IMG/VR virus record: IMGVR_UViG_3300032116_000004
Location: 248,001 to 312,000 of that record
DNA length: 64,000 nt
Reading direction: 5' to 3' (one strand)
Shown here piece after piece: positions 3,522 to 56,260 of the stretch (its first letter is position 1; each line of letters starts with the position of its first letter). The position numbers and the translations under genes are program-made. The notes beneath the pieces were generated by a model, which saw only the letters and a list, made by a program, of their open reading frames with translations, did no database searches and had not been told where the DNA came from.

Positions 3522-4731
3522 GTATCTTTTCTAGTTCTAAAATCCTGCGCTTGCCTTTGATCAATCCTGCTTGATATTGATCAGGCCATTGTTCCGCAAA
3601 CGTGGGTCTTTGCTTGAGTTGTAGTAAAACATCTCGTAGTGCGCCACGTGTGGCAGGCACTATCTCATCCACTTTGCGATGTAATATTTCTCTAGGCAAT
3701 GCCAGCGGACTCATTAAAATGTCCGGAGTAAAACTAAACACAACTTTGGCCAAGATGTCAACACCTAGTTCATCGGCTGTGCGTTGCATCGACTCAACTT
3801 CAAACAAACCTGGCAGAGTCAAAGTAAAGTCCAATCGCATCTGTCTGCGATGTCGTGCGATTTCTAGGCCACGTTTAAAGTTTTCTAAAAATACGGGCCA
3901 GGCCAAACCGGTTCTGATGTATTCTCCGATGGGTCCTGTTCCATCGATGCTTGCACAGATTTGGAAGTCTCGTATATTTGCCAGCAAATCACGATAAAGA
4001 CTAATCCCATTATAATCCACGCGGCTAAGGTTGGTATTGTATCTTGCATAAAGTCTTGGGCCATCACCCAGTTCAATGATTCTTTTCATATAGCGCCAAT
4101 GCTGTTCATACATCAGCGGCTCTCCGCCCACCCAATAGATTTCTTCTACACGATGTTCTTCTACTGCTTGAGCAAACTCTGCTTCTACCTGTGTGTCCTG
4201 GAACTGTATGATTTCACGTTTGACATCAGGCCGCATCCAGTTGTTTTTGGGATTTGACCAGTCTACCATGTCGTGTTTTTTCTCTTCAGTTTCCCAAGAG
4301 CTGGAAAGCATGTCTCCGCACATGCGACATTTAAAGTTGCAAAGATTACTAAATCTGTAGTCCCAGCTCACTGGTTTCAGTGTGGTTACACCGTCGGGTG
4401 TGGTGGCTGCCATGGCTTCCTCATACTTGTGACCAAACAGTCCCCAAAAGTAACTGCGATAGACATCTGTATTCAATAACTTCTCATTGCACACCGCACA
4501 CTCTGGCAAGGTCTCTCCGGCCATCATGCGCCGTCTCACAGATTTCATGTGTTCACTGTTCCAATGTTCATCCAGTGTGATGGGAATATAACGTCCGCTG
4601 CCGGCGGCTGTGTCTATATACTGTTCAAAGTTCTGTGCAGGCTCACGACTGGCACAACACATCCTCCTCTCGGTCTGTGGCGAGAGATATGTGTGTGTCC
4701 ACGGAGCCATGCACAGTGTTTCAGACTTCAT
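3445..4731 (-). CDS. Radical SAM protein with N-terminal twitch/SPASM-like Cys domain
   Basis: CNFKCRMC (CxxxCxxC) and GGEP; N-terminal CMAPW...MCC...CAVC. Confidence 0.9.
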   Translation of the reverse strand: MKSETLCMAPWTHTYLSPQTERRMCCASREPAQNFEQYIDTAAGSGRYIPITLDEHWNSEHMKSVRRRMMAGETLPECAVCNEKLLNTDVYRSYFWGLFGHKYEEAMAATTPDGVTTLKPVSWDYRFSNLCNFKCRMCGDMLSSSWETEEKKHDMVDWSNPKNNWMRPDVKREIIQFQDTQVEAEFAQAVEEHRVEEIYWVGGEPLMYEQHWRYMKRIIELGDGPRLYARYNTNLSRVDYNGISLYRDLLANIRDFQICASIDGTGPIGEYIRTGLAWPVFLENFKRGLEIARHRRQMRLDFTLTLPGLFEVESMQRTADELGVDILAKVVFSFTPDILMSPLALPREILHRKVDEIVPATRGALRDVLLQLKQRPTFAEQWPDQYQAGLIKGKRRILELEKIRGDQYTMAHILQQNQDMYDWWQDIR

Positions 4732-5932
4732 AATCTATCACTCGTGCTAACTCCGGCGCTATCTGTGAAAGGTTCTGACGACGCCTTAGATCTAGATCTT
4801 TTATCTTTATCTTCAAAAGATTTCCATCAGTGCTGGCACCATTGATCATGAAATCTACCACGCGATCAAACTCAGATCGGAATGACTCGGGCACCCATTC
4901 ACTTGACAATCTCTGTCGAACTGCCTGTTTAGCACGTTCGGGCAGGTTAGCAATACTGAAATAATAAGGATCATGCAACATGTTCCAGTAGACAAAATCA
5001 AACTTTTGACGATCGATCCATTGTGCCACGTCTGACAGATACATCACGTTGAACGCATTGATGGTGCAACACACCTGTAGAGTGATGTTTGAAATCCTAG
5101 ATCTCATCTGTCGGAACAGTTCGATATTGTGATTGATTTCCGACCAGCCAGCATTGCTACGTTGATATTCAAATCTCTCACCTACGTCATCCACAGAAAA
5201 AGCGATTTCAACATGCCGGAAATGGCACCAGATGTCTTCGGCTTCTTCGGGATATTGTGTGCCGTTGGTGTTGTAGTGTATTTCAATTTGATGAGCATAT
5301 CCACGGTCTACCAGGCGGCGCAGTAGATCAAAATGCTCTCGGATCATGAAAGGTTCGCCACCAGTGAACTCAATGTATCGGACTTGGGCCATGGCCGAAT
5401 CCAGTTCGTGCCAAAACTGCTCGCTGTTGCGCGGCCATGCTCCATCACGTAACATTTGATAATGGAAACTTTTCTTTTTATCTTCTCTATCAACAATAAA
5501 GTTCAACTCTTCTGAAGCAAAAGTCGACGAAGACCATGAACCACAGATGCGGCATTTGAGATTACAGATATTACCTAATTTGAGATCCAAAAACATCAAA
5601 GGTTTAGCATCTGCTGTCCAATTGTCAGAAATGCCCATATGTTTGAGCCTATCTAGAGTATGCATCCTTTTACTGGTACGACCGGCACGTTCTTCTTGCC
5701 AACATCTACGACAGGTCTGTGGTTGCTGGCCATCTAAAAACTGCTGACGCAGATTTTTTAGATGTTGGCTGTTCTGTATCTGGTCAAAGGTAGAGTTTGT
5801 AAGTTGGAATTTTTTCCCTTGATCATCTACTATCTCGTCCATGGCCAAACAGCAAGGTCTCACTGTGCCTATGGGACTGGTTTCTAAGCTAACCCACGGT
5901 AACACACAGAATTTCTCGTGTGGTATTTTCAT
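4721..5932 (-). CDS. Radical SAM protein with N-terminal twitch/SPASM-like Cys domain
   Basis: CNLKCRIC, GGEPF and YNTNGT; N-terminal CVLPW...PCC...CRRC. Confidence 0.9.
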   Translation of the reverse strand: MKIPHEKFCVLPWVSLETSPIGTVRPCCLAMDEIVDDQGKKFQLTNSTFDQIQNSQHLKNLRQQFLDGQQPQTCRRCWQEERAGRTSKRMHTLDRLKHMGISDNWTADAKPLMFLDLKLGNICNLKCRICGSWSSSTFASEELNFIVDREDKKKSFHYQMLRDGAWPRNSEQFWHELDSAMAQVRYIEFTGGEPFMIREHFDLLRRLVDRGYAHQIEIHYNTNGTQYPEEAEDIWCHFRHVEIAFSVDDVGERFEYQRSNAGWSEINHNIELFRQMRSRISNITLQVCCTINAFNVMYLSDVAQWIDRQKFDFVYWNMLHDPYYFSIANLPERAKQAVRQRLSSEWVPESFRSEFDRVVDFMINGASTDGNLLKIKIKDLDLRRRQNLSQIAPELARVIDYEV

Positions 5933-7197
5933 TGCAAGGCCTCCAGTTCGGGTATCACAGACAGCAGATTCTGTCCGCGGATGGCGTCTAGTTCGTGAGT
6001 CTTGCGCCAGAATACCTCCAGTAATTGAGTGTTATCTGACCCCATCATAAAATTGATAGCCGATTCAAAACCCACCGTGGCACGTTGCAAAGGATCTTGT
6101 GTTCTCAACCAATCAAGGTGCTCTTCAAAGCGTATCCTTAGACGTTGTTTGTATTTCATAGGTGCTATGTCTATTCTATAGTGTGCTGGATCTTGCAAGA
6201 TATTGACATTGAGATCCTGCGCACGTATCAGTCCTTGCTCTACCCAAGATTTATGAAAATCAGGTAGATGCCATGCGTTCATGATACTCAGCGTAGGAGA
6301 AATATAGAAATCTACGTTGGGGCAGATATCTATCATCCTACGACGATTATCTTCTACTGTGTTCCAATTGGTACCATTGCGTATGTATTCAGCACGCAAG
6401 TCCATGGCATCCAGGCTGGCTCCTACTGCTACACTCTTAAACTTTTTCCAATAGTCAAACACATATCGATCTTTGAGTTTGACTTGCGTGAAGTTTGTAT
6501 TGTAGATCAGGCGCACATCAAATCGTTCTCTGCGTTCTAATTCTTCCAGGATGCGATAGTGCTCATCCATCATCAGAGGCTCGCCACCTGCAAAATATAT
6601 CTGCTCTACATAATCAATATGCGGTAACAATTGGTTCCACATATCTTCGGGATCGCGACCTGCAATGTTCAAAGGTCTATTGTGTTTGGCCCATTCAGGA
6701 CCGGCTAACTTGATCTGATCTTGATACCATGAACTGGAAAAGATATGCCCACAACTGCGACAACTGAGATTGCAAAGATTACTGAAACGTATATCCCAAT
6801 AAGTCATCTCAAACGGATTGCTTTCTAATTTCTTGATGTGATGACCGTGATGTTTGTTGGCTGATCTCCGACCTGAAAAAAATCCCGATTCCTCTTGTTC
6901 ATAGCATCGACCACAGGCCGGGTTGGGCCGTTCGGCTAACATGTCTTCTCGCAACTGTGTCATGGACGGACCTTGCCAAATTTCGGCCAAGGTATTCTTT
7001 CTGCAATCGCCCACTGGGTATCGCATCTCTGCATGACAGCAAGGATAGGCTTCACCTGTGGGATAAGCATGCAGGTGTATCCAAGGATAGATACAGAATG
7101 TTTTGCTGTCTTTCAGCAGAAATTGTTCGCGATCGTTGAGATCCGTTGGTCGGACTAAATCTGCGGAATTATATTGATATTGTGTCATACCACTCAC
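5929..7197 (-). CDS. Radical SAM protein with N-terminal twitch/SPASM-like Cys domain
   Basis: CNLSCRSC, GGEPL and YNTN; N-terminal CIYPW...PCC...CGRC. Confidence 0.9.
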   Translation of the reverse strand: MSGMTQYQYNSADLVRPTDLNDREQFLLKDSKTFCIYPWIHLHAYPTGEAYPCCHAEMRYPVGDCRKNTLAEIWQGPSMTQLREDMLAERPNPACGRCYEQEESGFFSGRRSANKHHGHHIKKLESNPFEMTYWDIRFSNLCNLSCRSCGHIFSSSWYQDQIKLAGPEWAKHNRPLNIAGRDPEDMWNQLLPHIDYVEQIYFAGGEPLMMDEHYRILEELERRERFDVRLIYNTNFTQVKLKDRYVFDYWKKFKSVAVGASLDAMDLRAEYIRNGTNWNTVEDNRRRMIDICPNVDFYISPTLSIMNAWHLPDFHKSWVEQGLIRAQDLNVNILQDPAHYRIDIAPMKYKQRLRIRFEEHLDWLRTQDPLQRATVGFESAINFMMGSDNTQLLEVFWRKTHELDAIRGQNLLSVIPELEALQ

Positions 7198-8527
7198 TCA
7201 ATGCAGGAAAAGTCCTGCGGAAATTTTTGCCACGGCGCCGATCATATTGCTCGTAAAATTGTTTAAAATCGTTGTGCAATCGCGGCATATCAAATGCATC
7301 TGAATGCGGAGTCTTGACCACGTCAAGATAATCTATCAATCGTTGCATGTGATTGCGTTCGTGTTCATGCATCATGACATTGTCAGTCCAGCGATCTAAC
7401 CAGGCCTGCAATCGATCTCTATGACGCATACGGATGTGATCAGGCAAAACCAGTGGTGATTGGAAACTGGGAAATCTCAGGATGTTCAGCGTGAAGTTAG
7501 GAAAGTCCGAACCATGGTCCTGTTTCCATAACATGAGATAGGTCAGGAACTCTGGCAGGCTTTCCAGGCACAAGGCATTAATGGTACACATCACATGCAA
7601 GCCTCGCAGTTTTTTACTCTGCATGATGCGTTCCATGTTGTCGGTCCACTGTCCATAGTTCAAACCATCGCGGATATATTCAGCATGAGGACCGATGCTC
7701 TCATTGGAAGTATACAGATCCAGTTCTACATCTTCGCAGGCATTGATAGCACGTTCTATCACATCATATTCCATGCCAAGATTTGAGTTGATGGCCAGGC
7801 GTGTTTGCGAACGTCCGCGATTTTGTTGGAACCAATCCAACAACTTCCAGGTATATCCGCTCATCAGTGGTTCACCACCGGTGATGCGCAGTTCTTTCAG
7901 TGTTCTATGTAGGTCTGATTCCCACCACTGGAAAAATGCGTCCACATAAGGATTCCGATCATTGAATGTATACAACTGACTGCTGTCATGAGCGTGAGTG
8001 AAATGATTACGACCATCTGATACCAGGCCGGTGTAAGCACCGTGTTGTTTAATATCCCGAACCCATGTAGAACTAAAAGCAGGATTGCAATAAGAACAAG
8101 CGAACTGGCAAGTCCTATCAAAGGCGATTTCCAAGGTTTGTAAATCCACGTCTTGGTCCGCTGGAGTATGGTATGCATCATCAAGGTCCTCGTCTGAATA
8201 TATCACTGTCTTATACACACGGTCGCTGACGTTGTCTCGACCTATGTCTTCAATCTTCCAGCAGTATTCGCACCCTTGTGGGCGCTCGCCGCGTTGCATC
8301 ATGCCTCGTTCGGATTTTTTTTTGGCAGTATTGTGCAAGGCTTTGGGATTGGCTTCTGCATCTTCTACGCTGACTTTGTGAGGCAGCGGGTGATGGCAAC
8401 TGGTAGTCATGCCGGAGCCTAGCCAAATAGTAGCGTTATACCATTTGGCTCCACAAAAACTATCGGATTTGATATCGATCACCCGACGTTTGTATTCAAT
8501 ATCTGTTTCGTTGTCTTTACGTGGCAT
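7169..8527 (-). CDS. Radical SAM protein with N-terminal Cys/His domain
   Basis: CQFACSYC and TGGEPL; N-terminal CGAKW...SCHH...CEYC. Confidence 0.9.
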   Translation of the reverse strand: MPRKDNETDIEYKRRVIDIKSDSFCGAKWYNATIWLGSGMTTSCHHPLPHKVSVEDAEANPKALHNTAKKKSERGMMQRGERPQGCEYCWKIEDIGRDNVSDRVYKTVIYSDEDLDDAYHTPADQDVDLQTLEIAFDRTCQFACSYCNPAFSSTWVRDIKQHGAYTGLVSDGRNHFTHAHDSSQLYTFNDRNPYVDAFFQWWESDLHRTLKELRITGGEPLMSGYTWKLLDWFQQNRGRSQTRLAINSNLGMEYDVIERAINACEDVELDLYTSNESIGPHAEYIRDGLNYGQWTDNMERIMQSKKLRGLHVMCTINALCLESLPEFLTYLMLWKQDHGSDFPNFTLNILRFPSFQSPLVLPDHIRMRHRDRLQAWLDRWTDNVMMHEHERNHMQRLIDYLDVVKTPHSDAFDMPRLHNDFKQFYEQYDRRRGKNFRRTFPALSEWYDTISI

Positions 8528-13869: not shown

Positions 13870-13890
13870 TTTGCTTGGTTAATATATAAT

Positions 13891-15339
13891 TTATTGTTTG
13901 ATTAATTGCTTGGCTAGATATCCACAATCGGCCCACCATTCGACCATTTCTGGGAATACTTTGAGAAATCTCGTGCCGCGGCGTCGGTCATGTTCATCGA
14001 AAAATCGGAACCAATCCGCACGCTGACGGCGCACATAATCAGGATCTAGTTTCTTTCCTTCTCGCATCCACGCGATGTCTCTATCCAATCTCTGTAGTTC
14101 GTAATCTTTAAAGCCTTTGAATCGTCGTTCTTCGGTTTCGAGATTTTTCATCATGAAAACCCAAACTTCTTCCAGTTTGTCTGCGTAACTTTCGGGCAAG
14201 ATCTGCAGGCTCTGCCAGGCTGGATTTCTCAACACAGGAGTATCGAACCAAACACGCTGATAAGTGTTAGAATAGATCTGTCTTAATCCCAACATCCCTA
14301 CCATGAGTTCCTGGAAACTAGTCACTGACAAGTTGTTCATGGTTATGATAAATGTGATGGAACTGCGATGTGGTATTTCAGTGAGGAATTGATTCACACG
14401 ATCCCATAACAGGGCAAAATCCATACCATGCCGTATATACTCGGCACGGTCCATCCAAGCATCAAGGCTCACATACTGCATGAAATGCTCCACACGCTCG
14501 TTGTCGCAGATCATTTTCACATAACCTTTGTAGCGTTGCCAAAGACGTTCGTCGGCACAGAAGTTTGATGTTACATTAAGATGCAGTCGCGGATTGTGAT
14601 GAGCCATCACATAGTCAAACACTTTATAAGTGTTCTTGTCCATCATAGGCTCGCCGCCGGTCATACGGAAATGTTCTAGTTCCGGATACAGCGCAGGCCA
14701 CCACTGCCAAAATGCTTCAAGATAGGGATTGTGTTCACGAAAAGGTATGGGTTTGCGATCTCCTTGGAAGTAAGCAGGATCGTTATGAGGTGTAGCAGTG
14801 GGCCAGGCGCCGTGACGTTCTGCTTCTTCCATCCAGGACGTAGAAAATTGTGGACTGCAATAACTACATTTGAGATTGCAAACAGAATTGAAATTGACTT
14901 CCACATAACTAGGAGTGACATCTTGGTCCCATGGCGCGGTCACTATCTTTTCAAAATCACGAGCCGCCCAGGGTTCTCCGGATCTGTAATGACGATCCGA
15001 CATTTCTCCGAGATCTTCCATGTTCCAACAATACTGACATTCGCCCGGGCGTGTGCCTTCTAACATCAATCGGCGTTGCTGTTTTTTGTGTTCAGTATTG
15101 TGGATACCCGATGGACTGCGTTGTATGTCCTCGATGCGTATTTTGTGCAACGGAGGATGATAGCAGGAATTGGTATGGCCAGTGGTGAGATGTAAACTGA
15201 CTTGTTTCCACTTGGCCAAACAAAGACTAGAACTTACAGTATCGAGTTTTTGTTTGATTATTTCTGCATCACTTAAGAATTTTGACTTGAAGTCTTGTAA
15301 TACTTCATCGCCTTTGTTTTGTTCAGACAATATTGACAA
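13891..15339 (-). CDS. Radical SAM protein with N-terminal Cys/His domain
   Basis: CNLKCSYC and MTGGEP; N-terminal CLAKW...SCYH...CQYC. Same subtype as 7169..8527. Confidence 0.9.
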   Translation of the reverse strand: MSILSEQNKGDEVLQDFKSKFLSDAEIIKQKLDTVSSSLCLAKWKQVSLHLTTGHTNSCYHPPLHKIRIEDIQRSPSGIHNTEHKKQQRRLMLEGTRPGECQYCWNMEDLGEMSDRHYRSGEPWAARDFEKIVTAPWDQDVTPSYVEVNFNSVCNLKCSYCSPQFSTSWMEEAERHGAWPTATPHNDPAYFQGDRKPIPFREHNPYLEAFWQWWPALYPELEHFRMTGGEPMMDKNTYKVFDYVMAHHNPRLHLNVTSNFCADERLWQRYKGYVKMICDNERVEHFMQYVSLDAWMDRAEYIRHGMDFALLWDRVNQFLTEIPHRSSITFIITMNNLSVTSFQELMVGMLGLRQIYSNTYQRVWFDTPVLRNPAWQSLQILPESYADKLEEVWVFMMKNLETEERRFKGFKDYELQRLDRDIAWMREGKKLDPDYVRRQRADWFRFFDEHDRRRGTRFLKVFPEMVEWWADCGYLAKQLIKQ

Positions 15340-48428: not shown

Positions 48429-48444
48429 CGTGGATTCCTTGATG

Positions 48445-48450: not shown

Positions 48451-48488
48451 CCGGATGTCAAAACGGCTAACATAATGATTGAAATGAT

Positions 48489-48516
48489 TTGACAAAGATG
48501 CCAAATGTTGTATAAT
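48489..48516 (+). promoter_or_regulatory. Consensus sigma70 promoter for the late-sigma/gp47/gp46 operon
   Basis: TTGACA (48489-94), 16-nt spacer, TATAAT (48511-16); SD AGGAG at 48528-32. Confidence 0.8.
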
Positions 48517-48543: not shown

Positions 48544-49431
48544 ATGTCTATCAAGACTCCAGCCAAGACCAATTATCTCAACAACAAAGATATATTGAAA
48601 GAAATACACCACAGCAAGAATTCATACTGCACCTATGTGAACCCACAAATGGATCATCAGTATGACATCATCTTGCCTTCGCTGTCCAAGATCAATCAGC
48701 GAACCATAGCCGAAGCCCGGCGCAACAGGGCTGATAGGATCAAAAAAGAAACCGGCGAAGCAGTCAACGAAAAGAAGATTCCGCACACCGATCTTGTGTT
48801 CCGTATCACTACCTGGGAACACATACCCATGGCACCCAAAAAGCAAACCAAAGCCCAGGCCAAAAAAGCCAAGATGGAGGAACTGCTGGAACTGGATGAC
48901 ACCCAGGAAAGCGACGGGCTCGAGGACATCGTAGATGTGCCTGTGCTGGATACTGCACATGTCAGATTGAATTTTCCGCCGTTTTGGCACTATCGTTTGG
49001 ACGAAGAAAAACAGCCGTTTGTGGTGGGTAAATCACACTGGCGGGGTAGTCTAGACGGGGGCGAGTTCTGCAGGGAACATGGCAAAATGACCCCAAAATT
49101 GGCGCACATGTTTATCAAACTGTGCGAAAGATACGCTACAAGGAGCAATTGGCGTGGATACACCTACAACGAAGAAATGCGGGGTCAGGCCCTGCTACAG
49201 CTCAGCCAGATCGGATTGCAGTTCGATGAATCAAAATCGCAGAACCCTTTTGCGTATTATACTGCCGCTATCACTAATAGCTTCACTCGTGTGTTGAACA
49301 TAGAAAAGAAGATGCAGAACATACGCGATGATATCTTGGAAATGAACGGACTCAATCCTTCGTGGACTAGACAGTATTCGGAAAGCCATAACAAAGCAGC
49401 CGAAGCGGTCGCATCTCCTTCAGAAGAATAG
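48544..49431 (+). CDS. gp55: Late transcription sigma factor (T4 gp55-like)
   Basis: YLNNKDILKEI...ERYATRSNWRGYTYNEEMRGQA...FDESKSQNPFAYYT...NSF. Confidence 0.85.
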   Translation: MSIKTPAKTNYLNNKDILKEIHHSKNSYCTYVNPQMDHQYDIILPSLSKINQRTIAEARRNRADRIKKETGEAVNEKKIPHTDLVFRITTWEHIPMAPKKQTKAQAKKAKMEELLELDDTQESDGLEDIVDVPVLDTAHVRLNFPPFWHYRLDEEKQPFVVGKSHWRGSLDGGEFCREHGKMTPKLAHMFIKLCERYATRSNWRGYTYNEEMRGQALLQLSQIGLQFDESKSQNPFAYYTAAITNSFTRVLNIEKKMQNIRDDILEMNGLNPSWTRQYSESHNKAAEAVASPSEE

Positions 49432-49445
49432 TATACTGCTACTCT

Positions 49446-50594
49446 ATGGATAGTGGAATTTATTGTTCGGCTCCCTGGAGAGGAGTGACCGTGAGAGAAA
49501 ATGGAGACGTCAAAACCTGTTGTTCAGGCAAAACATCTCTGGGCAATCTCAATTCCAAATCTATTAGAGAGATATTGCACCACTCTGACGCTTTGGAAGA
49601 AATAAAATCCTATCTGTTGGACGGTCGTGAGCATAGCAACTGTGCCGAATGCATCATGCACGACAAACAACACAACACGGCTTCATTGCGACAGCATTAC
49701 CAAACTCACTATCCGTTGGATGATTTTACCCACAAACTGAGATTCGTTGATGTGAGATGGAACAACAAATGTAACCTTGCGTGTCAGTATTGTTCGCCTA
49801 CATTCAGCAGTGTTTGGGAAGATCGAATGGGAGTATCCACAACCTCTCCTCGTAAAAGCTATCAGGATGATTTGTTACAATGGGTGCTTGAAAAATCACA
49901 CGAACTCAAGGAATTAATGTTAGTGGGCGGTGAGCCCATGTTGATGAAACAAAATTATGAGTTGCTAAAACAATTACCACAAGATTGTAGGATCAGCATC
50001 ATAACCAATTTTGCCTACGACCTAGCCACGCTGCCATGTTTTGAAGATCTGCTACGGCGACCTCGAAACAATGTCATATGGAACATCAGCATCGAGAATA
50101 TTGGACAGCAATTGGAGTATGTGCGCAACGGCATACAATGGGATAGATTTCTTGCCAACTTAAAGTTGGTGTTACAGTATTGGCCCGACAGCGTGAGTTT
50201 CAACATGGTTTACAGCATGTTCAATGCGTTGGATCTTTACGATATCGTGCGATACTATCATGAACACGGTGTGAAAAAAATAACGTTGATGCCGATCGCC
50301 GGACATCCTGAAATCAGTGCGTTCAACATGCCAACTCCTATCAAACAACAACTGGTGAACGTTCTGGATCGCATATCAACCTGGCACGCACAGACCCATG
50401 GCATAGATGCTGATCTATATCCTATCTCTGGGTTACAGTCGATTCGCCAAGGGCTGATCGAATCTCACAGCAAAAACACTGTCAACAAAAAGAATTTCTA
50501 TGAAAAAGTTCAGTGGTATGACTCCTGGTCAGATCTAAAGTTCAACGTTTTATGGCCGGATACCATTGATATGATCGAAAGATATCTACAATAA
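49446..50594 (+). CDS. Radical SAM protein with N-terminal twitch-like domain
   Basis: CSAPW...TCC...CAEC, CNLACQYC and GGEP. Confidence 0.9.
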   Translation: MDSGIYCSAPWRGVTVRENGDVKTCCSGKTSLGNLNSKSIREILHHSDALEEIKSYLLDGREHSNCAECIMHDKQHNTASLRQHYQTHYPLDDFTHKLRFVDVRWNNKCNLACQYCSPTFSSVWEDRMGVSTTSPRKSYQDDLLQWVLEKSHELKELMLVGGEPMLMKQNYELLKQLPQDCRISIITNFAYDLATLPCFEDLLRRPRNNVIWNISIENIGQQLEYVRNGIQWDRFLANLKLVLQYWPDSVSFNMVYSMFNALDLYDIVRYYHEHGVKKITLMPIAGHPEISAFNMPTPIKQQLVNVLDRISTWHAQTHGIDADLYPISGLQSIRQGLIESHSKNTVNKKNFYEKVQWYDSWSDLKFNVLWPDTIDMIERYLQ

Positions 50595-50595
50595 C

Positions 50596-51612
50596 ATGAC
50601 CAATCTATTTAAAAAAGCCATAGTCTTCACTGACATCCATTTTGGACTGAAATCGAATAGCCTGTTGCACAATCAAGATTGCGAGCAGTTTGTAGATTGG
50701 ATCATCGCCCAGGGCAAGGAACACGGTTGCGAAACCGGCATGTTCTTGGGTGACTGGCATCACCATCGTGCGGCTATCAACTTACAAACACTGAACTTCA
50801 GTCTACAAGCATTGGAAAAACTAAGCAAAGCATTCTCTCAGTTCTTTTTTATTCCGGGCAATCACGATCTGTATTATCGCGACAAACGGGATATCCACGG
50901 TGCGGCCTGGGCCCGGCACTTGCCCAACATACATATCTGCAACGATTGGTTCCAAGAAGGTGATGTTGTCATTGCTCCTTGGTTGGTCGGAGACGAACAC
51001 CGACGCATCGAAAAATTGAATGCCAAATACATGTTTGGTCATTTTGAACTGCCACACTTCAAAATGAATGCCATGGTAGAAATGCCCGATCATGGAACCA
51101 TACAGGTAGATCATTTTGGACATATCGATCAAGTGTTTTCTGGTCACTTTCATCTTCGACAACACAAAAACAACATCAACTACATTGGCAATGCGTTTCC
51201 GCACAACTTTGCCGATGCTGGTGATGCCAATCGTGGCTGCATGATATTGGAGTGGGGCAAGCAACCCGAATATCATGCATGGCCCGAACAGCCCTTATAC
51301 AATGTCTGGGATCTCAGCCATGTCATTGACAACGCTGAACAAATCTTGAAGCCCAACATGCATGTGCGTGTGCAACTAGACATCGAAATATCCTATGAAG
51401 AAGCCACTTTCATCAAAGACACATTTATCGTCAAGCATGGCCTGCGAGAAATGGCCCTGATACCCAACAAGCGATCTGCCTTGGAAGAAGACATGGCTCC
51501 CGGAGATGTGAAATTTGAATCAGTGGATCAGATCGTCACAGATCAGATCACCAAGATAGAATCAGAGTTCTACGATCCTAAACTATTACTCCAAATATAT
51601 CAGGCGCTATGA
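50596..51612 (+). CDS. gp47: Recombination endonuclease, Mre11/SbcD-like (T4 gp47)
   Basis: FTDIHFG, FLGDWHH, PGNHD, FGHFEL and SGHFH phosphoesterase motifs. Confidence 0.92.
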   Translation: MTNLFKKAIVFTDIHFGLKSNSLLHNQDCEQFVDWIIAQGKEHGCETGMFLGDWHHHRAAINLQTLNFSLQALEKLSKAFSQFFFIPGNHDLYYRDKRDIHGAAWARHLPNIHICNDWFQEGDVVIAPWLVGDEHRRIEKLNAKYMFGHFELPHFKMNAMVEMPDHGTIQVDHFGHIDQVFSGHFHLRQHKNNINYIGNAFPHNFADAGDANRGCMILEWGKQPEYHAWPEQPLYNVWDLSHVIDNAEQILKPNMHVRVQLDIEISYEEATFIKDTFIVKHGLREMALIPNKRSALEEDMAPGDVKFESVDQIVTDQITKIESEFYDPKLLLQIYQAL

Positions 51613-53099
51613 TTATTTCCACCCTAGAGTTAGAACACCAACTAAAGTCAACCCACAACGTCAAAGTAATTCACGATCTTGGCAAGCTGTCAACCGGCCC
51701 CACGGAGTTGTTTAAGCTACTAGACAGTGTTTACCAAACTAGTTACGAGACAAACGATCGGTTGGTTTTTTACACTTCACATTTTATTCCTGAGAGTTTT
51801 CTACAGTTCTTTTACGAAACTATCAATTTTATAGATATCAGCAACTGGTTCATAATGATATGTGGGCCAAAAGAAATTGAGCACGACGTGTTGTCGTGTT
51901 GTAAAAAGTTTTCACTTGACTCTGTTCCAATTTGGTTCCACCCAGTTGAGTTAGACAAACAAACACACAAGATTGAAAACAACTTTAATTTACCCGATAC
52001 TATTTGTTCTATACCCTGGCACAACTTACAGATAACACAAAACGGAACTATTACTCCTTGTTGCATGAACAATCTTGATCTTGGTAACGTCAACCGTATC
52101 AAACTAGATCAAGCGTTCCATGACGAAAAACTACAAAAGTTAAGGGCTAGTTTATTGGCTGGAGAAAAACCAAAAGAGTGCGACAACTGCTGGAAAGTGG
52201 AAGAAAAAAATCTAACTTCTATTAGACTGCACAATGTCAAGCATTTAAAGAGAGAATTTTTAACCAAATATCTTGATCAACCAAGAGTAGCTACATTAGA
52301 TTTGAAGTTTAATAACACCTGTAATTTCAAATGCAGGATATGTAACGGTGGAAACAGCTCGTTGTTTGCCCTTGAAGATCAAAAGTTCCGCGGATCTAAG
52401 TTAGTTGTACAAGATGCTTGGGGGGAGAGTCAAGATTTTATTGATCAAGTTCTAACGTACTTGCCTGACATAAAAAATATTGACATGTTTGGCGGCGAGC
52501 CGTTTTTGATTAAACGTTTTAAATCGGTGTTGGAGATGGCAGTTGAAAAAGACTACGCCAAGGACATTAGATTACACTACAACAGCAACGGATCCATTTG
52601 GCCCAATCATTTGCTACCTGTTTGGCCTAGTTTTAAACTGGTAGACATACATTTTAGTATTGATGCTGTTGGTTCACATTTTGAACTACAAAGAGGCGGT
52701 CAGTGGTCTGAAGTTGAGGACAACATACTAAGGCTCAAAGATTTACAGTTACCCAACCTGTCTATTAGTATCATGCCCACTATCAGTGTCATGAGCGTTT
52801 ACTACATAGACCAAGTCTACGACTGGGCTTGCAAACATGGTTTTCCTATATTTGTTAACCATGTGCAAGGTGAAGGAATGGAGCTACAGGATCTTACAAA
52901 AGAAGCCAAAAAAATTATTATTGACAAGTTTCAAGATCACCCCTGGAATGAAATCCAAAATGTTATTAAGATAATACAAAATTTGCCTGACAGTGATGGC
53001 AAGAAGTTTCAATCTAAAATGCAATATTTTGATCAGGTTCGAAGTGAAAGTTTTTCAGCAAGTCACTCTGAGATTGCAAAAGCCATGAGATATATGTAA
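51609..53099 (+). CDS. Radical SAM protein with an extra N-terminal domain plus twitch-like domain
   Basis: CSIPW...PCC...CDNC, CNFKCRIC, GGEPF and YNSNG. Confidence 0.9.
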   Translation: MIISTLELEHQLKSTHNVKVIHDLGKLSTGPTELFKLLDSVYQTSYETNDRLVFYTSHFIPESFLQFFYETINFIDISNWFIMICGPKEIEHDVLSCCKKFSLDSVPIWFHPVELDKQTHKIENNFNLPDTICSIPWHNLQITQNGTITPCCMNNLDLGNVNRIKLDQAFHDEKLQKLRASLLAGEKPKECDNCWKVEEKNLTSIRLHNVKHLKREFLTKYLDQPRVATLDLKFNNTCNFKCRICNGGNSSLFALEDQKFRGSKLVVQDAWGESQDFIDQVLTYLPDIKNIDMFGGEPFLIKRFKSVLEMAVEKDYAKDIRLHYNSNGSIWPNHLLPVWPSFKLVDIHFSIDAVGSHFELQRGGQWSEVEDNILRLKDLQLPNLSISIMPTISVMSVYYIDQVYDWACKHGFPIFVNHVQGEGMELQDLTKEAKKIIIDKFQDHPWNEIQNVIKIIQNLPDSDGKKFQSKMQYFDQVRSESFSASHSEIAKAMRYM

Positions 53100-53108
53100 A
53101 ATATAAAA

Positions 53109-54872
53109 ATGATACAAATCAAAGACCTAACCGTTAAAAACTTTATGAGTGTGGGCAATGCCACACAAGCCATCAACTTTGATCGTCAAGACCTTACATT
53201 AGTTCTAGGTGAAAACTTAGATTTAGGCGGCGATGGCAGCCGTAACGGCACAGGTAAGACCACTATAATCAATGCACTGAGTTATGCGCTGTATGGTCAA
53301 GCTCTCACCAATATCCGACGCGACAATCTCATCAACAAAGCCAACAGCAAGAACATGTTGGTCAGTTTAGATTTCAACATCAATGGCCGCGACTACCGCA
53401 TCGAGCGTGGTCGCAAACCCAACATACTGAAATTCTACGTCAACAACGAAGAACAGGCAGCAGATGACAACTCGCAAGGCGACAGTCGAGAAACACAAGA
53501 TGCCATAGAGTCTGCCCTGGGCATGACTCACGACATGTTCCGACATGTGCTGGCGCTGAACACATACACAGAACCGTTTTTGAGCTTGAAGGCCAATGAT
53601 CAACGTGTGATCATAGAACAACTGTTGGGTATCACCCTTTTGAGTGAGCGTGCTGAGCGCATCAAAGAACTCAATAGAGAAACCAAAGATGCCATTGCTC
53701 AGGAAGAAATGCGTATCCGAGCTGTGCAAGAAGCCAACAAGCGTATAGAAGAACAGATCGAAAATCTGCGGCGTAGGCAAACAATGTGGAAGACCAAACA
53801 TGAGGAAGAGACAGATAAAATCCAAAAGGCCTTGGAAGAACTGCGAAAGATCGACATTGACGCAGAGATCCAAGCGCACAAGGACTACAAAATTTGGGAT
53901 CAGAAGCGCAAAGACATCAACGATCTTGCTGGACAAATATCCCGCACGAAACTTGATGTTGATCGCGAGACGAAAAACATTGGCAAACTTAGCAAAGAGA
54001 TTGCGACTCTTGAACAGCATACCTGTCATACATGCGGTCAAGCCTTCCACGACTCAAAGCACCAACAGGTACTGGCAAGCAAGCAGGAGGATTTGGCAAC
54101 AGCAAGAACGTCTTGCCAGGAGCATACACAAACGCTATCAGAAATGGAGGCTGCCCACACCTCCTTGGGCCAGTTAGGAAAACCTCCCAAGATGTTCTAT
54201 GATGCGGAAGAAGATGCCATACAACATCGTGCCAACGTAGACAACCTACAACAACAACTGGACATCAAGGCACAAGAAACAGATCCCTACGGTGAACAGA
54301 TCGAAGAGATGACAGGACAGGCCCTGCAAACAGTGACCTATGACACTCTCAACGAACTCACCCGCTTGCAAGAGCATCAAGACTTCCTGTTAAAACTCTT
54401 GACCAACAAAGACTCATTCATCCGCAAAAAGATTATTGAGCAGAATTTGAGTTATTTGAATGCTCGGTTGACATACTATCTTGATCGCATCGGCTTGCCA
54501 CATTCGGTAATATTCCAAAACGATCTCACTGTGGAAATACAAGAATTGGGACGAGATCTAGACTTTGACAATTTAAGTCGCGGAGAGCGCAATAGACTGA
54601 TCTTGTCAATGTCATGGGCCTTCCGTGATGTATGGGAATCATTGTATCATCCCATCAACGTGCTGTTCATCGACGAACTGGTAGATTCAGGCATGGACAC
54701 ACAGGGTGTGGAAAATTCGTTGGCCTTGCTGAAGAAGATGAGTCGTGAACGGCACAAGTCAATATGGTTAGTATCGCACAGAGACGAACTGGCTGGACGT
54801 GTTGAAAACATCCTGCGTGTGGTCAAAGAAAACGGCTTTACGTCATACAACACCGACATTGACATAGCATGA
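53109..54872 (+). CDS. gp46: Recombination ATPase, Rad50/SbcC-like (T4 gp46)
   Basis: Walker A NGTGKTT, coiled coil with CHTC zinc hook, LSRGE signature, Walker B LFIDE and VSH. Confidence 0.93.
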   Translation: MIQIKDLTVKNFMSVGNATQAINFDRQDLTLVLGENLDLGGDGSRNGTGKTTIINALSYALYGQALTNIRRDNLINKANSKNMLVSLDFNINGRDYRIERGRKPNILKFYVNNEEQAADDNSQGDSRETQDAIESALGMTHDMFRHVLALNTYTEPFLSLKANDQRVIIEQLLGITLLSERAERIKELNRETKDAIAQEEMRIRAVQEANKRIEEQIENLRRRQTMWKTKHEEETDKIQKALEELRKIDIDAEIQAHKDYKIWDQKRKDINDLAGQISRTKLDVDRETKNIGKLSKEIATLEQHTCHTCGQAFHDSKHQQVLASKQEDLATARTSCQEHTQTLSEMEAAHTSLGQLGKPPKMFYDAEEDAIQHRANVDNLQQQLDIKAQETDPYGEQIEEMTGQALQTVTYDTLNELTRLQEHQDFLLKLLTNKDSFIRKKIIEQNLSYLNARLTYYLDRIGLPHSVIFQNDLTVEIQELGRDLDFDNLSRGERNRLILSMSWAFRDVWESLYHPINVLFIDELVDSGMDTQGVENSLALLKKMSRERHKSIWLVSHRDELAGRVENILRVVKENGFTSYNTDIDIA

Positions 54873-55492
54873 CATCCCGGATCATACGAGTCACACCTAC
54901 CGAACAATACTTCAGCATCAATTGGCAATTGGCTGTGCGTTGCAACTATGATTGCATGTATTGTTCTCCCATGTGGCATGATGATCATAGCCAGCATCAT
55001 GATCTTGACACTATGAAACAGGCTTGGTTAAACATATTTGAAAAGACCAGCAAACAAAATCTACCCTATAAGATCGCATTTACCGGTGGAGAACTCACTT
55101 CAAACAAACACTTTCTACCGTTTGTCACTTGGTTGCGGAAGGAATATGATCAGCACATATTCAAATTGCTGGCTACCACCAATGGCAGCGCCAATCTCAA
55201 GTATTATCAGAAAATGTTCCAAGCGTTAGACAACATCGCATTCAGTGTGCATTCGGAACACATCAATGAAGAGAAATTTTTTGACATGATCATACAACTT
55301 AAGAAAAGTATCTCACCTGATAAATTCTTGCAGGTCGCTATCATGGATGAATACTGGAATCAAGATCGTATTCCGTTGTATATCAATCTGCTAGAACATC
55401 ACGACATCAGCTACACTGTGAACAAGATAGATTATTCCTATCAGACTCGCACCGTGCCCATATTCAAAGGAAAATTGAATCTTGGAATTTGA
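54869..55492 (+). CDS. Short radical SAM core protein (207 aa)
   Basis: CNYDCMYC, FTGGE, TTNGS and FSVHSE. Confidence 0.85.
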   Translation: MTSRIIRVTPTEQYFSINWQLAVRCNYDCMYCSPMWHDDHSQHHDLDTMKQAWLNIFEKTSKQNLPYKIAFTGGELTSNKHFLPFVTWLRKEYDQHIFKLLATTNGSANLKYYQKMFQALDNIAFSVHSEHINEEKFFDMIIQLKKSISPDKFLQVAIMDEYWNQDRIPLYINLLEHHDISYTVNKIDYSYQTRTVPIFKGKLNLGI

Positions 55493-55802
55493 AAATCATC
55501 AATACTATAACTGTGAAATAGAACTGTCAGATGGGAGATCGTTCAAGGTCAGTGCCAACTGGATGCACAATAACGATTTAGATCATTGGTCAGGATGGAG
55601 TTGCGATGCAGGTTATCGTCGATTGGATATAGACAAGGATTTCAACGTCTACAGCGCAGTTTGTCAAAACGATCGCTTGGGCAATCTTTTCAAAGAATGG
55701 AGCCCGTTTGATGCTCCCGGAATCTGTCGACGGAATCGATGCACAGGTTGTACCGACGATCTTTTGATTGGAAAACGTGATATTTCTATATCTGAGAAAT
55801 AA
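55482..55802 (+). CDS. Cys-rich twitch/SPASM-like Fe-S domain protein
   Basis: WSCDAG...AVC...GNL...CRRNRCTGCTDD; TTG start overlapping the upstream gene. Confidence 0.6.
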   Translation: MEFENHQYYNCEIELSDGRSFKVSANWMHNNDLDHWSGWSCDAGYRRLDIDKDFNVYSAVCQNDRLGNLFKEWSPFDAPGICRRNRCTGCTDDLLIGKRDISISEK

Positions 55803-55819
55803 TTGATAATTATGTGCTC

Positions 55820-56260
55820 ATGTCATGGCTTTTCGAATCCCGAGAAATCACAGAGTTACCCGAAACGTGTGTCGGGTTTGTTTATTTGATCACCAATAAA
55901 CTTACCGGCCGGCAGTATATTGGCAAAAAATTAGCAAAGTTCAAGAAAACAACATATCGAGTAGTCAAACTCAAAAATGGCAAAAAGAAACGCAAAAAAA
56001 TCAGAGGCGCGATAGATTCAGATTGGCAGACATATTATGGCAGTTCTCCGGAGTTATCTCGAGATGTTGAACTGCTAGGCACCGAAAACTTCTCACGTGA
56101 AATACTGTATTACTGCCAATCCAAATCGGAATGCAGTTACATAGAGGCTCGCGAACAATTCTCCCGACGTGTATTAGAAAGTGATGACTATTACAACGGA
56201 CACATACAGGTCCGTGTGCATGGCAGTCACATCAAAGGCAAACTAAGCAGTCAAGGCTAG
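55820..56260 (+). CDS. GIY-YIG endonuclease (Seg/DenA-like, single domain)
   Basis: GFVYLITN...YIGKK (GIY-YIG variant), YYGSS, REIL, E...YYN; Lys/Arg-rich insertion KKTTYRVVKLKNGKKKRKKIR. Confidence 0.88.
   Translation: MSWLFESREITELPETCVGFVYLITNKLTGRQYIGKKLAKFKKTTYRVVKLKNGKKKRKKIRGAIDSDWQTYYGSSPELSRDVELLGTENFSREILYYCQSKSECSYIEAREQFSRRVLESDDYYNGHIQVRVHGSHIKGKLSSQG

What the first reader, a model, noticed from the sequence alone, without database searches (positions are those of the whole stretch)
48544..56260. Radical SAM genes occupy every junction of the gp55-gp47-gp46-GIY-YIG core module
Seen: gp55 | rSAM (49446) | gp47 | rSAM (51609) | gp46 | rSAM (54869) + twitch-like (55482) | GIY-YIG, all co-oriented with gaps of 17 nt or less, or overlaps. 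Established: gp47 and gp46 form one nuclease complex and are commonly neighbours in T4-like phages, where intergenic insertions are typically homing endonucleases. Inference: this radical SAM family spreads by repeated insertion between core genes, borrowing their promoter, which gives eight radical SAM genes in 64 kb. It may behave as a semi-mobile or diversifying gene family.
Basis: partly seen in the sequence, partly recalled or inferred. Interest (0 to 1): 0.62.

Follow-up and report, generated by a model that had tools for sequence, protein, structure and literature searches.

The report
Radical SAM genes in phage operon slots
In a 316-kb freshwater jumbo phage, the three gaps between four conserved T4-type genes each hold a radical SAM enzyme gene. 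In related phages the same gaps are empty or hold other enzymes, so these are old swappable slots rather than a self-spreading gene family.

Summary
One operon runs gp55, rSAM-A, gp47, rSAM-B, gp46, rSAM-C plus a Cys-rich ORF, then GIY-YIG. It sits behind a perfect sigma-70-type promoter, and its junctions are 1 to 17 nt or overlaps. The window has 8 radical SAM genes and the 316-kb genome has 14. Twelve of the 14 belong to NCBIfam NF033640, the N-terminal-twitch radical SAM family.

Across 78 non-redundant relatives the four core genes are always present and in this order. The three junctions vary greatly: each is empty in some phages and holds 1 to 5 co-oriented enzyme genes in others, with at least 17, 22 and 12 empty/filled changes on the core tree. 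About half of the occupants are radical SAM genes, from at least four families.

The window's three are not recent copies of each other. A and B are 26% identical and C is another family. Each has orthologues at the same junction in distant relatives, diverging in step with the core, while the closest relatives lack or have replaced them. One relative keeps a deletion scar.

No repeats or mobility genes flank them. Turnover is best explained by deletion and by recombination through the flanking core genes. This is a T4-type hyperplastic site with unusual occupants. The enzymes' function is unknown.

The parts
48489..48516 (+). Sigma-70-type promoter (TTGACA, 16 nt, TATAAT; 12 of 12), followed by an AGGAG box and the gp55 ATG at 48544
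   Evidence: A TTGACA-N16-TA(T/C)AAT-like site lies upstream of gp55 in 36 of 50 relatives.
48544..49431 (+). gp55-like late sigma factor. The mechanical ORF starts at 48505, but the promoter and SD box point to 48544.
   Evidence: phrog_12791 at 3.8e-78 and phrog_234 at 3.5e-23. No Pfam hit.
49446..50594 (+). rSAM-A, 382 aa, in slot J1. N-terminal twitch domain followed by the radical SAM core (NF033640).
   Evidence: NF033640 at 212.5 bits against a cut-off of 170. SPASM at residues 7-69 and Radical_SAM at 107-256. Invariant Cys at 7, 66 and 69, near-invariant Cys at 25, and the radical SAM triad at 109, 113 and 116. AlphaFold2 model with mean pLDDT 89.9. Orthologues sit at J1 in 8 non-redundant relatives, 9 loci in all.
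50596..51612 (+). gp47 / SbcD-Mre11-like nuclease subunit
   Evidence: phrog_100 at 1e-54. Relatives are 61-89% identical.
51609..53099 (+). rSAM-B, 496 aa, in slot J2. About 130 aa of extra N-terminal domain, then a twitch domain, then the radical SAM core (NF033640).
   Evidence: NF033640 at 276.4 bits. Orthologues at J2 only in L010 (49% by BLASTP; 56% over aligned columns) and L052 (43%). Its ATG overlaps the gp47 stop exactly where the gp46 ATG sits in empty alleles.
53109..54872 (+). gp46 / SbcC-Rad50-like ATPase subunit
   Evidence: phrog_77 at 2e-97. AAA_23 and SMC_N domains.
54869..55492 (+). rSAM-C core, 207 aa, in slot J3. Conventional domain order and a different family from A and B.
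   Evidence: CX3CX2C motif at residue 25. PF04055 at 28.3 bits, just under the 29.5 cut-off. phrog_13987 at 9.4e-14. NF033640 only 29 bits. Prokaryotic viperin model 56.7 bits against a cut-off of 180.
55482..55802 (+). Cys-rich twitch/SPASM-like domain of rSAM-C, encoded as a separate ORF in the +1 frame with an 11-nt overlap
   Evidence: It aligns to the C-terminal domain of the fused 330-333 aa homologues in L044 and L047. The same split occurs in L010.
55814..56260 (+). SegE-type GIY-YIG nuclease-domain protein. The likely start is the ATG at 55820.
   Evidence: PF19835 at 1.1e-32. Present at this position in all 68 relatives where gp46 and its downstream flank are covered, at 36-92% identity.
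3445..8527 (-). Four tandem NF033640 paralogues (3445-4731, 4721-5932, 5929-7197, 7169-8527) inside a nucleotide-sugar gene cluster
   Evidence: NF033640 at 284, 343, 391 and 297 bits. 5929-7197 has more than 120 homologue clusters at 77% identity or above. The tandem array is present in all five relatives searched.
13891..15339 (-). Fifth NF033640 paralogue of the sugar cluster
   Evidence: NF033640 at 305.7 bits.

Best explanation
The region is one early operon of a T4-related freshwater jumbo phage. It runs from a sigma-70-type promoter through gp55, gp47, gp46 and a GIY-YIG gene. Its three internal gene boundaries are long-standing hyperplastic slots.

**How the slots work**
- Whatever gene lies in a slot starts exactly where the downstream core gene would otherwise start: an ATGA stop/start overlap, or the same short spacer.
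- The occupant is therefore transcribed from the operon promoter and translated by coupling.

**What fills them**
- The clade shares a pool of accessory enzyme genes for these slots.
- About half are radical SAM enzymes from at least four families. The main ones are the virus-dominated N-terminal-twitch family NF033640 and a roughly 336-aa rSAM-SPASM family.
- The rest are AMP-ligase-like, aminotransferase-like, SDR and unknown genes.

**How this window came to look as it does**
- The window kept three unrelated, old occupants: rSAM-A at J1 (gp55|gp47), rSAM-B at J2 (gp47|gp46), and the split rSAM-C at J3 (gp46|GIY-YIG).
- Differences among relatives arise mainly by deletion. Some whole slot alleles are also exchanged by homologous recombination through the conserved flanking genes during co-infection.
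- No mobility of the radical SAM genes themselves is needed.

**Function (inferred, low confidence)**
- These are tailoring enzymes acting on a small-molecule or glycan substrate. They may be linked to the phage's own nucleotide-sugar cluster, which holds five more paralogues.
For: **Core order and slot variability**
- The core order is conserved in all 78 non-redundant relatives.
- J1 is empty in 36 and filled in 22. J2 is empty in 25 and filled in 45. J3 is empty in 14 and filled in 54.
- The minimum number of empty/filled changes on the core tree is 17, 22 and 12. There are 9, 26 and 25 distinct contents.
- 199 of 202 occupants are co-oriented with the operon.

**Boundaries**
- The 14-nt spacer after gp55 is identical before rSAM-A in the window and before gp47 in L001, L003 and L004.
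- The ATGA overlap at the end of gp47 is used by gp46 in empty alleles and by every occupant in filled ones.
- There is no Shine-Dalgarno box inside the module, although AAGGAG is the genome-wide signal.
- The promoter is conserved.

**Old, site-faithful occupants**
- rSAM-A lies in a starred clade of 10: itself, 8 other J1 members and one gene at another locus.
- rSAM-B lies in a J2 clade with L010 and L052.
- The location label needs 12 changes on the family tree, against 22.4 when labels are shuffled.
- In the roughly 336-aa family, the J2 members fall on one side of a single branch (support 89, not starred).

**Co-divergence with the core**
- Spearman rho is 0.78 for the rSAM-A clade, 0.71 for the shorter (about 290-aa) J3 subclade of the 336-aa family, and 0.59 for the J2 clade whose sister is the sugar-cluster paralogue at 5929-7197.

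**Loss**
- L065/L096 keeps the first 33 or so and the last 35 or so codons of an rSAM-A orthologue in a 209-nt J1.
- The closest relatives, L001-L004 (gp46 88-91% identical), lack rSAM-A and rSAM-C. At J2 they have nothing, a 336-aa rSAM, or a different NF033640 lineage.

**Lateral exchange and recombination**
- The longer (about 337-aa) J3 subclade of the 336-aa family does not track the core (rho 0.12). For L016 and L029 the occupant-to-core distance ratio is 0.26.
- gp47 of L027 and L086 is as close to the window as that of L001-L004. A gp46 tree that holds them together is rejected with p-AU 1e-77.
- Contigs of co-occurring relatives join gp55 to gp47 and gp47 to gp46 directly. This evidence is weak.

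**No mobile-element features**
- No flanking direct or inverted repeats.

**Precedent**
- T4 has seven accessory genes, including alpha-glucosyltransferase and mobB, between genes 55 and 47.
Against: - Gain and loss cannot be told apart without a root. The core tree is rooted at its midpoint, and the core genes themselves recombine.
- Co-divergence would also appear if slot alleles travel together with their flanks.
- Most relatives are metagenomic fragments, and gene calls are mechanical ORFs.
- No RNA data could be found, so co-transcription is inferred from sequence only.
- The functional proposal rests on gene neighbourhood alone. The fold search gave only generic radical SAM matches with TM about 0.4, and no paper on NF033640 was found in the library searched.
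Confidence: 0.68

Rival explanations
1. The radical SAM family is semi-mobile and keeps copying itself into boundaries between core genes, which is why this genome has so many copies.
For: - Twelve NF033640 paralogues per genome.
- Besides the two in this module, the five copies outside the window also sit directly beside other genes, in several cases overlapping their ends. Four of these neighbours are core genes: UvsX, a DNA helicase, the prohead protease and an endolysin.
- At least 3 independent NF033640 lineages occur at J2, and three at J1.
- Sister lineages occur at different sites. The rSAM-B clade is sister to the J1 occupants of L029 and L061. The J3 clade is sister to the paralogue at G000 position 99686. 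One rSAM-A-type gene lies at another locus in L088.
Against: - The paralogues are ancient. A and B are 26% identical, and tree branches between site-changing lineages are 1 to 2.4 substitutions per site.
- Lineages are site-faithful and co-diverge with the core.
- There are no repeats or mobility genes.
- The slots accept many non-radical-SAM genes.
- rSAM-C is not of this family.
- The change directly observed is loss.
Confidence: 0.12
2. Differential loss only. The common ancestor carried long multi-gene arrays in all three slots, and every present pattern is a subset left by deletions, with no lateral exchange.
For: - Multi-gene arrays exist, with 5 genes at J2 and J3 of L019 and two NF033640 genes at J2 of L026.
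- Occupant and core distances are proportional for most lineages.
- A deletion scar is present.
Against: - It would require an ancestor with at least 4 NF033640 lineages plus many other genes at J2, and dozens of parallel losses (40 to 44 content changes).
- The longer (337-aa) J3 subclade is uncorrelated with the core, with ratios down to 0.26.
- gp47 and gp46 have conflicting histories.
Confidence: 0.12
3. Functional coupling. The radical SAM enzymes sit there because they work with gp55, gp47 or gp46, for example on DNA or on the nuclease complex.
For: - Tight translational coupling with these genes.
- Other paralogues lie beside UvsX and a helicase.
- T4 keeps a DNA-modifying enzyme in the same slot.
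Against: - The slots are empty in many relatives and hold unrelated enzymes in others.
- Paralogues also lie beside the prohead protease, an endolysin and sugar genes.
- No thymidylate-synthase or hydroxymethylase homologue was found in this 91%-complete genome.
Confidence: 0.07
4. Assembly chimera or annotation artefact.
For: The source is a metagenome-assembled record.
Against: - Five further contigs carry the same arrangement at 100% protein identity.
- 15 runs hold half or more of the sampled words of the stretch. Up to nine of the holding runs may be the source sample.
- All ORFs are intact, with catalytic motifs present.
Confidence: 0.01

Closest known systems
Hyperplastic regions of T4-like phages; the 55 | alpha-gt ... 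47.1 | 47 | 46 region of phage T4
   Same: The order and orientation of gp55, gp47 and gp46 are the same. Co-oriented accessory genes fill the gaps between these core genes. T4 has seven genes between 55 and 47, including a DNA-modifying enzyme and a homing endonuclease. The literature describes variable genes grouped between core blocks (PMC4122927, PMC2839356; titles and abstracts seen).
   Different: Here the occupants are mostly radical SAM and other tailoring enzymes. The cassettes carry no promoter or stem-loop (PeSL-type) borders and are joined start-on-stop. Turnover is documented across about 78 relatives.
NCBIfam NF033640, 'twitch domain-containing radical SAM protein' (N_Twi_rSAM)
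   Same: rSAM-A, rSAM-B and ten further paralogues score above the curated cut-off over the full model length. They have four N-terminal Cys, a CX3CX2C motif and a GGEP motif.
   Different: rSAM-B and several relatives carry an extra N-terminal domain of about 130 aa. The nearest ESM Atlas clusters are 90-100% viral. None of 14 control cellular genomes has a member above the cut-off. The family has no known reaction as far as the searches reached.
SPASM/twitch radical SAM enzymes of known structure (CteB, anSME, SkfB, SuiB, BlsE, MoaA, viperin)
   Same: They share the partial TIM-barrel radical SAM core and an auxiliary Cys-rich cluster domain. These are the best Foldseek matches.
   Different: TM is only about 0.35-0.42 and identity 14-18%. 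The auxiliary domain lies N-terminal to the core, in a permuted order. No specific functional match emerged.
Free-standing homing endonucleases (Seg/Mob) between T4 core genes
   Same: A SegE-type GIY-YIG domain protein ends the module.
   Different: It is present at the same place in every relative covered, and at about 145 aa it is little more than the GIY-YIG domain, against 205 aa that I recall for T4 SegE. It behaves as a conserved gene, not as a sporadic mobile one.

Membership tests
NF033640 N_Twi_rSAM (rSAM-A, rSAM-B) | Whole-protein score above the curated cut-off of 170 bits, over the full model | tested here: met
   212.5 bits (model positions 4-394) and 276.4 bits (2-396). The ten other paralogues score 186-391 bits.
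NF033640 N_Twi_rSAM (rSAM-A, rSAM-B) | Cys-rich twitch/SPASM-like domain N-terminal to the CX3CX2C radical SAM core | tested here: met
   Pfam SPASM at 7-69 and 133-195, before Radical_SAM at 107-256 and 234-391. Invariant Cys at 7, 66 and 69, near-invariant Cys at 25, and the triad at 109, 113 and 116, plus GGEP.
NF033640 N_Twi_rSAM (rSAM-C) | Score above the cut-off and an N-terminal twitch domain | tested here: not met
   29.4 bits. CX3CX2C lies at residue 25, and the Cys-rich domain is C-terminal and on a separate ORF.
Radical SAM superfamily (PF04055) | Pfam gathering score of 29.5 bits and a CX3CX2C motif | tested here: met
   rSAM-A scores 41.4 and rSAM-B 39.1. rSAM-C scores 28.3, just under the threshold, but has the motif and matches phrog_13987 at 9.4e-14.
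Prokaryotic viperin (NF038283) | Score above 180 bits | tested here: not met
   The best score is rSAM-C at 56.7 bits.
T4 gp46/gp47 (Rad50/Mre11-like) pair | SbcC-like ATPase and SbcD-like phosphoesterase encoded as co-oriented neighbours | tested here: met
   phrog_77 at 2e-97 and phrog_100 at 1e-54. AAA_23 and SMC_N domains.
T4 gp55 late sigma factor | Sequence match to the late sigma families | tested here: met
   phrog_12791 at 3.8e-78 and phrog_234 at 3.5e-23. Activity was not testable.
Homing endonuclease (Seg type) | Sporadic presence/absence among close relatives | tested here: not met
   GIY-YIG is present at this position in all 68 relatives where gp46 and its downstream flank are covered. 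The domain match itself is met (PF19835, 113 bits).
PeSL-type mobile regulatory cassettes of T4-like phages | Cassette borders formed by an early promoter plus a stem-loop terminator | tested here: not met
   The junctions are overlaps or 1-17 nt. The only 12/12 promoter is upstream of gp55, and there is no terminator-like site at the borders.
Transposable or otherwise self-mobile element | Terminal inverted or direct repeats, target-site duplication, or a mobility gene | tested here: not met
   Only chance-level repeats of 26 nt or less, none at gene borders. No transposase or integrase among the occupants.
Hyperplastic region of T4-like genomes | Variable accessory genes at a fixed place between conserved core genes across relatives | tested here: met
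   The same place in T4 is shown.

The most novel reading that the evidence does not exclude
A clade of roughly 315-350 kb freshwater jumbo phages has expanded a virus-dominated, uncharacterised radical SAM family with a permuted (N-terminal) auxiliary-cluster domain to about a dozen copies per genome. The phages keep a conserved tandem set of these genes in a nucleotide-sugar cluster. They also keep a combinatorially variable set plugged into translationally coupled slots of early operons. On this reading the slot polymorphism is maintained by diversifying selection, because the enzymes tailor a phage-made glycan, metabolite or nucleic-acid modification that matters in the arms race with the host.
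Probability: 0.2. Interest if true: 0.75.

Novelty: new variant of a known kind. Interest (0 to 1): 0.5.

Why it matters
- It shows that the textbook T4 module 55-47-46 carries insertion slots that stay in the same place from T4 to distant 350-kb freshwater phages. The slots can be read out across many metagenomic relatives as a natural experiment in gene gain, loss and replacement.
- It points to an abundant, virus-dominated radical SAM family (NF033640-type, 12 copies in this genome) with a permuted domain order and no known reaction. The family lies next to a phage nucleotide-sugar pathway, which makes it a concrete target for enzymology.
- It corrects the idea that these genes are mobile in their own right.

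Tried and rejected
- **blastn against cultured phages:** only short hits in gp47 and gp46 of jumbo phages (PA5oct group, Atu_ph07, XacN1). There is no close cultured relative.
- **tblastn of rSAM-A against cultured phages:** only 20-25% identity, to Vibrio KVP40-like and Ralstonia phages.
- **The search for related loci on genome contigs with a family alignment:** The gene context of cellular NF033640 members was therefore not examined.
- **Pfam scan of unknown sugar-cluster ORFs, the rSAM-B N-terminal domain and the 380-aa J2 family:** no hits.
- **Fold search of the rSAM-A model against PDB:** only generic radical SAM folds.
- **Literature searches** for the family and for radical SAM genes in jumbo phages: nothing specific.
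- **DNA hypermodification via hydroxymethyl-pyrimidines:** no thymidylate-synthase-family gene was found, so the idea is not supported, though not excluded.
- **TATAAT-like motifs at some cassette 3' ends:** these turned out to belong to the conserved C-terminus and stop region of one NF033640 lineage, not to a general border signal.
- **RNA evidence for co-transcription:** no RNA run holds the stretch.
- **Contig joints from co-occurring relatives:** these have short sides and are only weak support.
- **Cluster correction:** the BLAST single-linkage cluster 'R1' mixed true NF033640 genes with a non-radical-SAM 380-aa family through a shared N-terminal domain. Counts were redone using the CX3CX2C motif.
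- **Not used:** the large representative-protein search, complex prediction and RNA tools.

Full report
**1. What is in the sequence**

On the + strand between 48.5 and 56.3 kb lie eight tightly packed ORFs. Family scans identify them as follows:
- a gp55-like late sigma factor (phrog_12791, 3.8e-78);
- a 382-aa radical SAM protein, here rSAM-A;
- gp47/SbcD (phrog_100, 1e-54);
- a 496-aa radical SAM protein, rSAM-B;
- gp46/SbcC (phrog_77, 2e-97; AAA_23 and SMC_N);
- a 207-aa radical SAM core, rSAM-C;
- a 106-aa Cys-rich ORF;
- a SegE-type GIY-YIG protein (PF19835, 113 bits).

The junctions are +14, +1, -4, +9, -4, -11 and +11 nt. The last is +17 nt if GIY-YIG uses the ATG at 55820, as its relatives do.

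Inside the operon there is no comparable promoter and no Shine-Dalgarno box, although AAGGAG is the genome-wide ribosome-binding signal.

The window lies at 248001-312000 of a 315,778-bp IMG/VR virus record estimated to be 91% complete.

**2. The radical SAM genes**

rSAM-A and rSAM-B have an unusual domain order: a SPASM/twitch-like Cys-rich domain comes before the radical SAM core. Both pass the curated cut-off of NCBIfam NF033640, 'twitch domain-containing radical SAM protein' (212 and 276 bits against 170).
- Five more members lie on the - strand of the window (3445-8527 and 13891-15339), inside a nucleotide-sugar cluster. That cluster also encodes a carbamoyltransferase, a cupin, an epimerase, a GHMP kinase and a GDP-mannose 4,6-dehydratase.
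- Five more lie elsewhere in the genome, giving 12 in all.
- With rSAM-C and one other gene, the genome has 14 radical SAM genes.
- The family alignment has four conserved N-terminal Cys, the CX3CX2C triad and GGEP.
- An AlphaFold2 model of rSAM-A is confident (pLDDT 89.9). It matches solved SPASM/twitch enzymes and viperins only generically, at TM about 0.4.
- The nearest ESM Atlas clusters are 90-100% viral.
- None of 14 control cellular genomes has a member above the cut-off, while five related phage records have 6-11 each.

rSAM-C belongs to another family. It scores 29 bits on NF033640 and has weak STM4011- and viperin-like matches far below their cut-offs. Its Cys-rich partner ORF is the C-terminal domain of the same enzyme. 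In L044 and L047 the two are one 330-333 aa protein. In the window and in L010 they are split at the linker, in the same +1 frame with the same 11-nt overlap.

**3. Relatives**

A gp46 search of IMG/VR returned 80 loci at 61-91% identity, and an rSAM-A search returned 17 more. Five of the latter are the same phage at 100% protein identity in other samples. After removing near-duplicates, 78 loci remain.

Every locus that covers the region keeps gp55, gp47, gp46 and GIY-YIG in that order and orientation. The gaps between them do not stay constant.

| Slot | Empty state | Empty loci | Filled loci | Largest fill | Min. empty/filled changes | Distinct contents |
|---|---|---|---|---|---|---|
| J1 (gp55\|gp47) | 1-52 nt, mostly 12-14 | 36 | 22 | 1602 nt | 17 | 9 |
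| J2 (gp47\|gp46) | 4-nt overlap | 25 | 45 | 4342 nt, five genes | 22 | 26 |
| J3 (gp46\|GIY-YIG) | 15-78 nt | 14 | 54 | 4854 nt | 12 | 25 |

All but 3 of 202 occupant ORFs are co-oriented with the operon.

Of those ORFs, 97 are radical SAM genes. They fall into NF033640, a roughly 336-aa rSAM-SPASM family, a roughly 500-aa B12-binding methyltransferase-like family, the rSAM-C type and a roughly 280-aa type. The rest include AMP-ligase-like, aminotransferase-like, SDR, DUF6071 and unknown proteins.

The window is the only one of 48 fully covered relatives with a radical SAM gene in all three slots. Independent slot frequencies predict about 1.7, so the triple occupancy itself needs no special explanation.

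**4. Are the window's three genes recent insertions?**

They are not.
- rSAM-A and rSAM-B are 26% identical and fall in different deep clades of the family tree.
- rSAM-A belongs to a starred clade of ten genes. Nine of them, counting rSAM-A itself, sit at J1 of phages spread over both halves of the core tree. The tenth sits at another locus (L088).
- The three subclades of that clade mirror the core tree. Pairwise distances correlate with core distances (Spearman 0.78, ratio about 1.7).
- rSAM-B groups with the J2 genes of L010 and L052, with ratios of 1.2-1.5.
- rSAM-C-type genes occur at J3 of L010, L044 and L047.

So each gene is an old resident of its slot.

Yet the closest relatives differ at every slot (L001-L004, gp46 88-91% identical):
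- none has rSAM-A or rSAM-C;
- J2 is empty in L002 and L003;
- J2 holds a 336-aa rSAM in L001;
- J2 holds a different NF033640 lineage in L004.

L065/L096 keeps a 209-nt remnant at J1, made of the first 33 or so and the last 35 or so codons of an rSAM-A orthologue. This is a direct deletion scar.

**5. Independent lineages and moves between slots**

NF033640 genes at J2 belong to at least three or four separate lineages, and a single clade is rejected (p-AU 2.7e-5).

A few deep moves between sites are visible:
- the rSAM-B clade is sister to the J1 genes of L029 and L061 and lies near a sugar-cluster paralogue;
- the J3 NF033640 clade is sister to the paralogue beside the prohead protease;
- in the 336-aa family, the J2 members fall on one side of a single branch among the J3 members (support 89, not starred).

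Overall, however, lineages are site-faithful. The location label needs 12 changes on the tree, against 22.4 when labels are shuffled.

**6. How the slots change**

The borders are exact.
- The 14-nt spacer after gp55 is identical before rSAM-A in the window and before gp47 in L001, L003 and L004. The difference between the two states is therefore the rSAM-A ORF plus one base, bounded by two ATGs.
- At J2, the ATGA stop/start overlap at the end of gp47 is used by gp46 in empty alleles and by whichever occupant is present in filled ones.
- At J3, gp46 ends in the same ATGA, and a conserved GATAACTA-like motif stays with GIY-YIG.
- No direct or inverted repeats flank the genes.

There is evidence for allele exchange by recombination.
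- The longer (337-aa) J3 subclade of the 336-aa family does not follow the core tree (rho 0.12). The L016/L029 pair is far too similar for its core distance, with a ratio of 0.26.
- gp47 of L027 and L086 is as close to the window as that of L001-L004, while their gp46 is not. Holding them together in a gp46 tree is rejected at p-AU 1e-77, with the caveat that the group was chosen after seeing the identities.
- Contigs of co-occurring relatives in lake metagenomes join gp55 to gp47 and gp47 to gp46 directly. The matched sides are short, so this evidence is weak.

I infer that deletions, and homologous recombination through the conserved flanks during co-infection, drive the turnover. Selection for translational coupling keeps the borders exact. 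Gain and loss cannot be separated rigorously without a reliable root.

**7. Wider pattern**

- The five NF033640 genes outside the window also sit directly beside other genes, in several cases overlapping their ends: after a UvsX-like recombinase, before a DNA helicase, overlapping the end of the prohead protease, after an NAD-synthetase-like gene, and before an endolysin.
- The tandem sugar-cluster copies are conserved. 5929-7197 has more than 120 homologue clusters at 77% identity or above, and the array is present in all five relatives searched.
- The family therefore has a stable part and a variable part.

**8. Comparison with what is known**

T4 itself has 55, then a-gt.5 through a-gt.2, mobB, a-gt and 47.1, then 47, all co-oriented. 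Hyperplastic regions between core blocks of T4-like phages are well described (PMC4122927, PMC2839356; seen).

What differs here:
- the occupants are radical SAM and other tailoring enzymes rather than small ORFs and homing endonucleases;
- the borders lack promoter/stem-loop features;
- the GIY-YIG gene is conserved rather than sporadic.

I file this as a new variant of a known kind.

**9. Function**

Nothing found here assigns a reaction. My working proposal is tailoring of a small molecule or glycan, possibly tied to the phage's nucleotide-sugar cluster. It is an inference from gene neighbourhood and from the other slot occupants (SDR, aminotransferase-like, AMP-ligase-like). I hold it at about 0.3.

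A DNA-modification role is not excluded. It gains no support from the absence of a thymidylate-synthase-family gene.

**10. Verdict**

The junctions are real, promoter-sharing insertion slots with independent occupants. The radical SAM genes are old residents subject to loss and swapping, not a family that is currently spreading.

Noticed in passing
window 54869-55802; L010:6200-7130; L044:2923-3915; L047:10628-11629: rSAM-C is split from its Cys-rich C-terminal domain at the linker. The same +1 frame and 11-nt overlap occur in two phages that are only 55-60% identical, while the enzyme is fused in two others. This is either a two-subunit enzyme or a programmed frameshift.
   Followed up: partly
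L096:3496-3727 (same contig as L065, slot J1): A 209-nt intergenic remnant holds the first 33 or so and the last 35 or so codons of an rSAM-A orthologue, out of frame with each other. It is a deletion scar.
   Followed up: yes
window 801-15339 (- strand): A nucleotide-sugar-type cluster (carbamoyltransferase, cupin, NAD-epimerase, GHMP kinase, GDP-mannose 4,6-dehydratase) is interleaved with five NF033640 radical SAM genes and several ORFs that have no family match.
   Followed up: partly
G000 positions 21649, 36253, 99686, 124313, 146076 (loci L098-L102): Five further NF033640 paralogues sit directly beside a UvsX-like recombinase, a DNA helicase, the prohead protease, an NAD-synthetase-like gene and an endolysin. 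Several overlap the neighbouring gene by 4-8 nt.
   Followed up: partly
window 51609-52000 (rSAM-B residues 1-130); L007:759-1901; L019:4834-5955; L078:6151-7308: rSAM-B and other roughly 500-aa slot members carry an extra N-terminal domain. It weakly resembles the N-terminus of a roughly 380-aa non-radical-SAM family that also lives in J2 (29% over 45 aa). That family appears as two ORFs of about 180 aa each in L006, L027, L071 and L076.
   Followed up: partly
L015:4153-5655 and eight other loci, mostly in J3, with one in J1 of L057: B12-binding radical SAM methyltransferase-like genes of about 500 aa (weak PhpK-, TIGR04072- and ApyD-type matches) are another recurrent slot occupant.
   Followed up: no
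window 22757-37264 (- strand): A single 4835-aa ORF, followed by ORFs of 1135, 780 and 987 aa. These are presumably virion or fibre proteins and were not examined.
   Followed up: no
whole genome G000: TAAATA is 18-fold enriched within 40 nt upstream of genes (47 genes), resembling the T4 late promoter. The genes inside the gp55-GIY-YIG operon have neither this motif nor a Shine-Dalgarno box.
   Followed up: partly
L024:546-2423; L026:1326-3212: The gp55 ORF is 625-628 aa in two relatives, twice the usual length. This suggests an N-terminal fusion or a missed upstream gene.
   Followed up: no
window 46722-48473 (- strand) and its homologues: The divergently oriented gene upstream of gp55 varies from about 330 to about 1200 aa among relatives, at 35-71% identity. 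The stretch downstream of GIY-YIG also varies in length.
   Followed up: no
whole genome G000: No thymidylate-synthase or hydroxymethylase family gene (PF00303) was found in this 91%-complete genome.
   Followed up: yes
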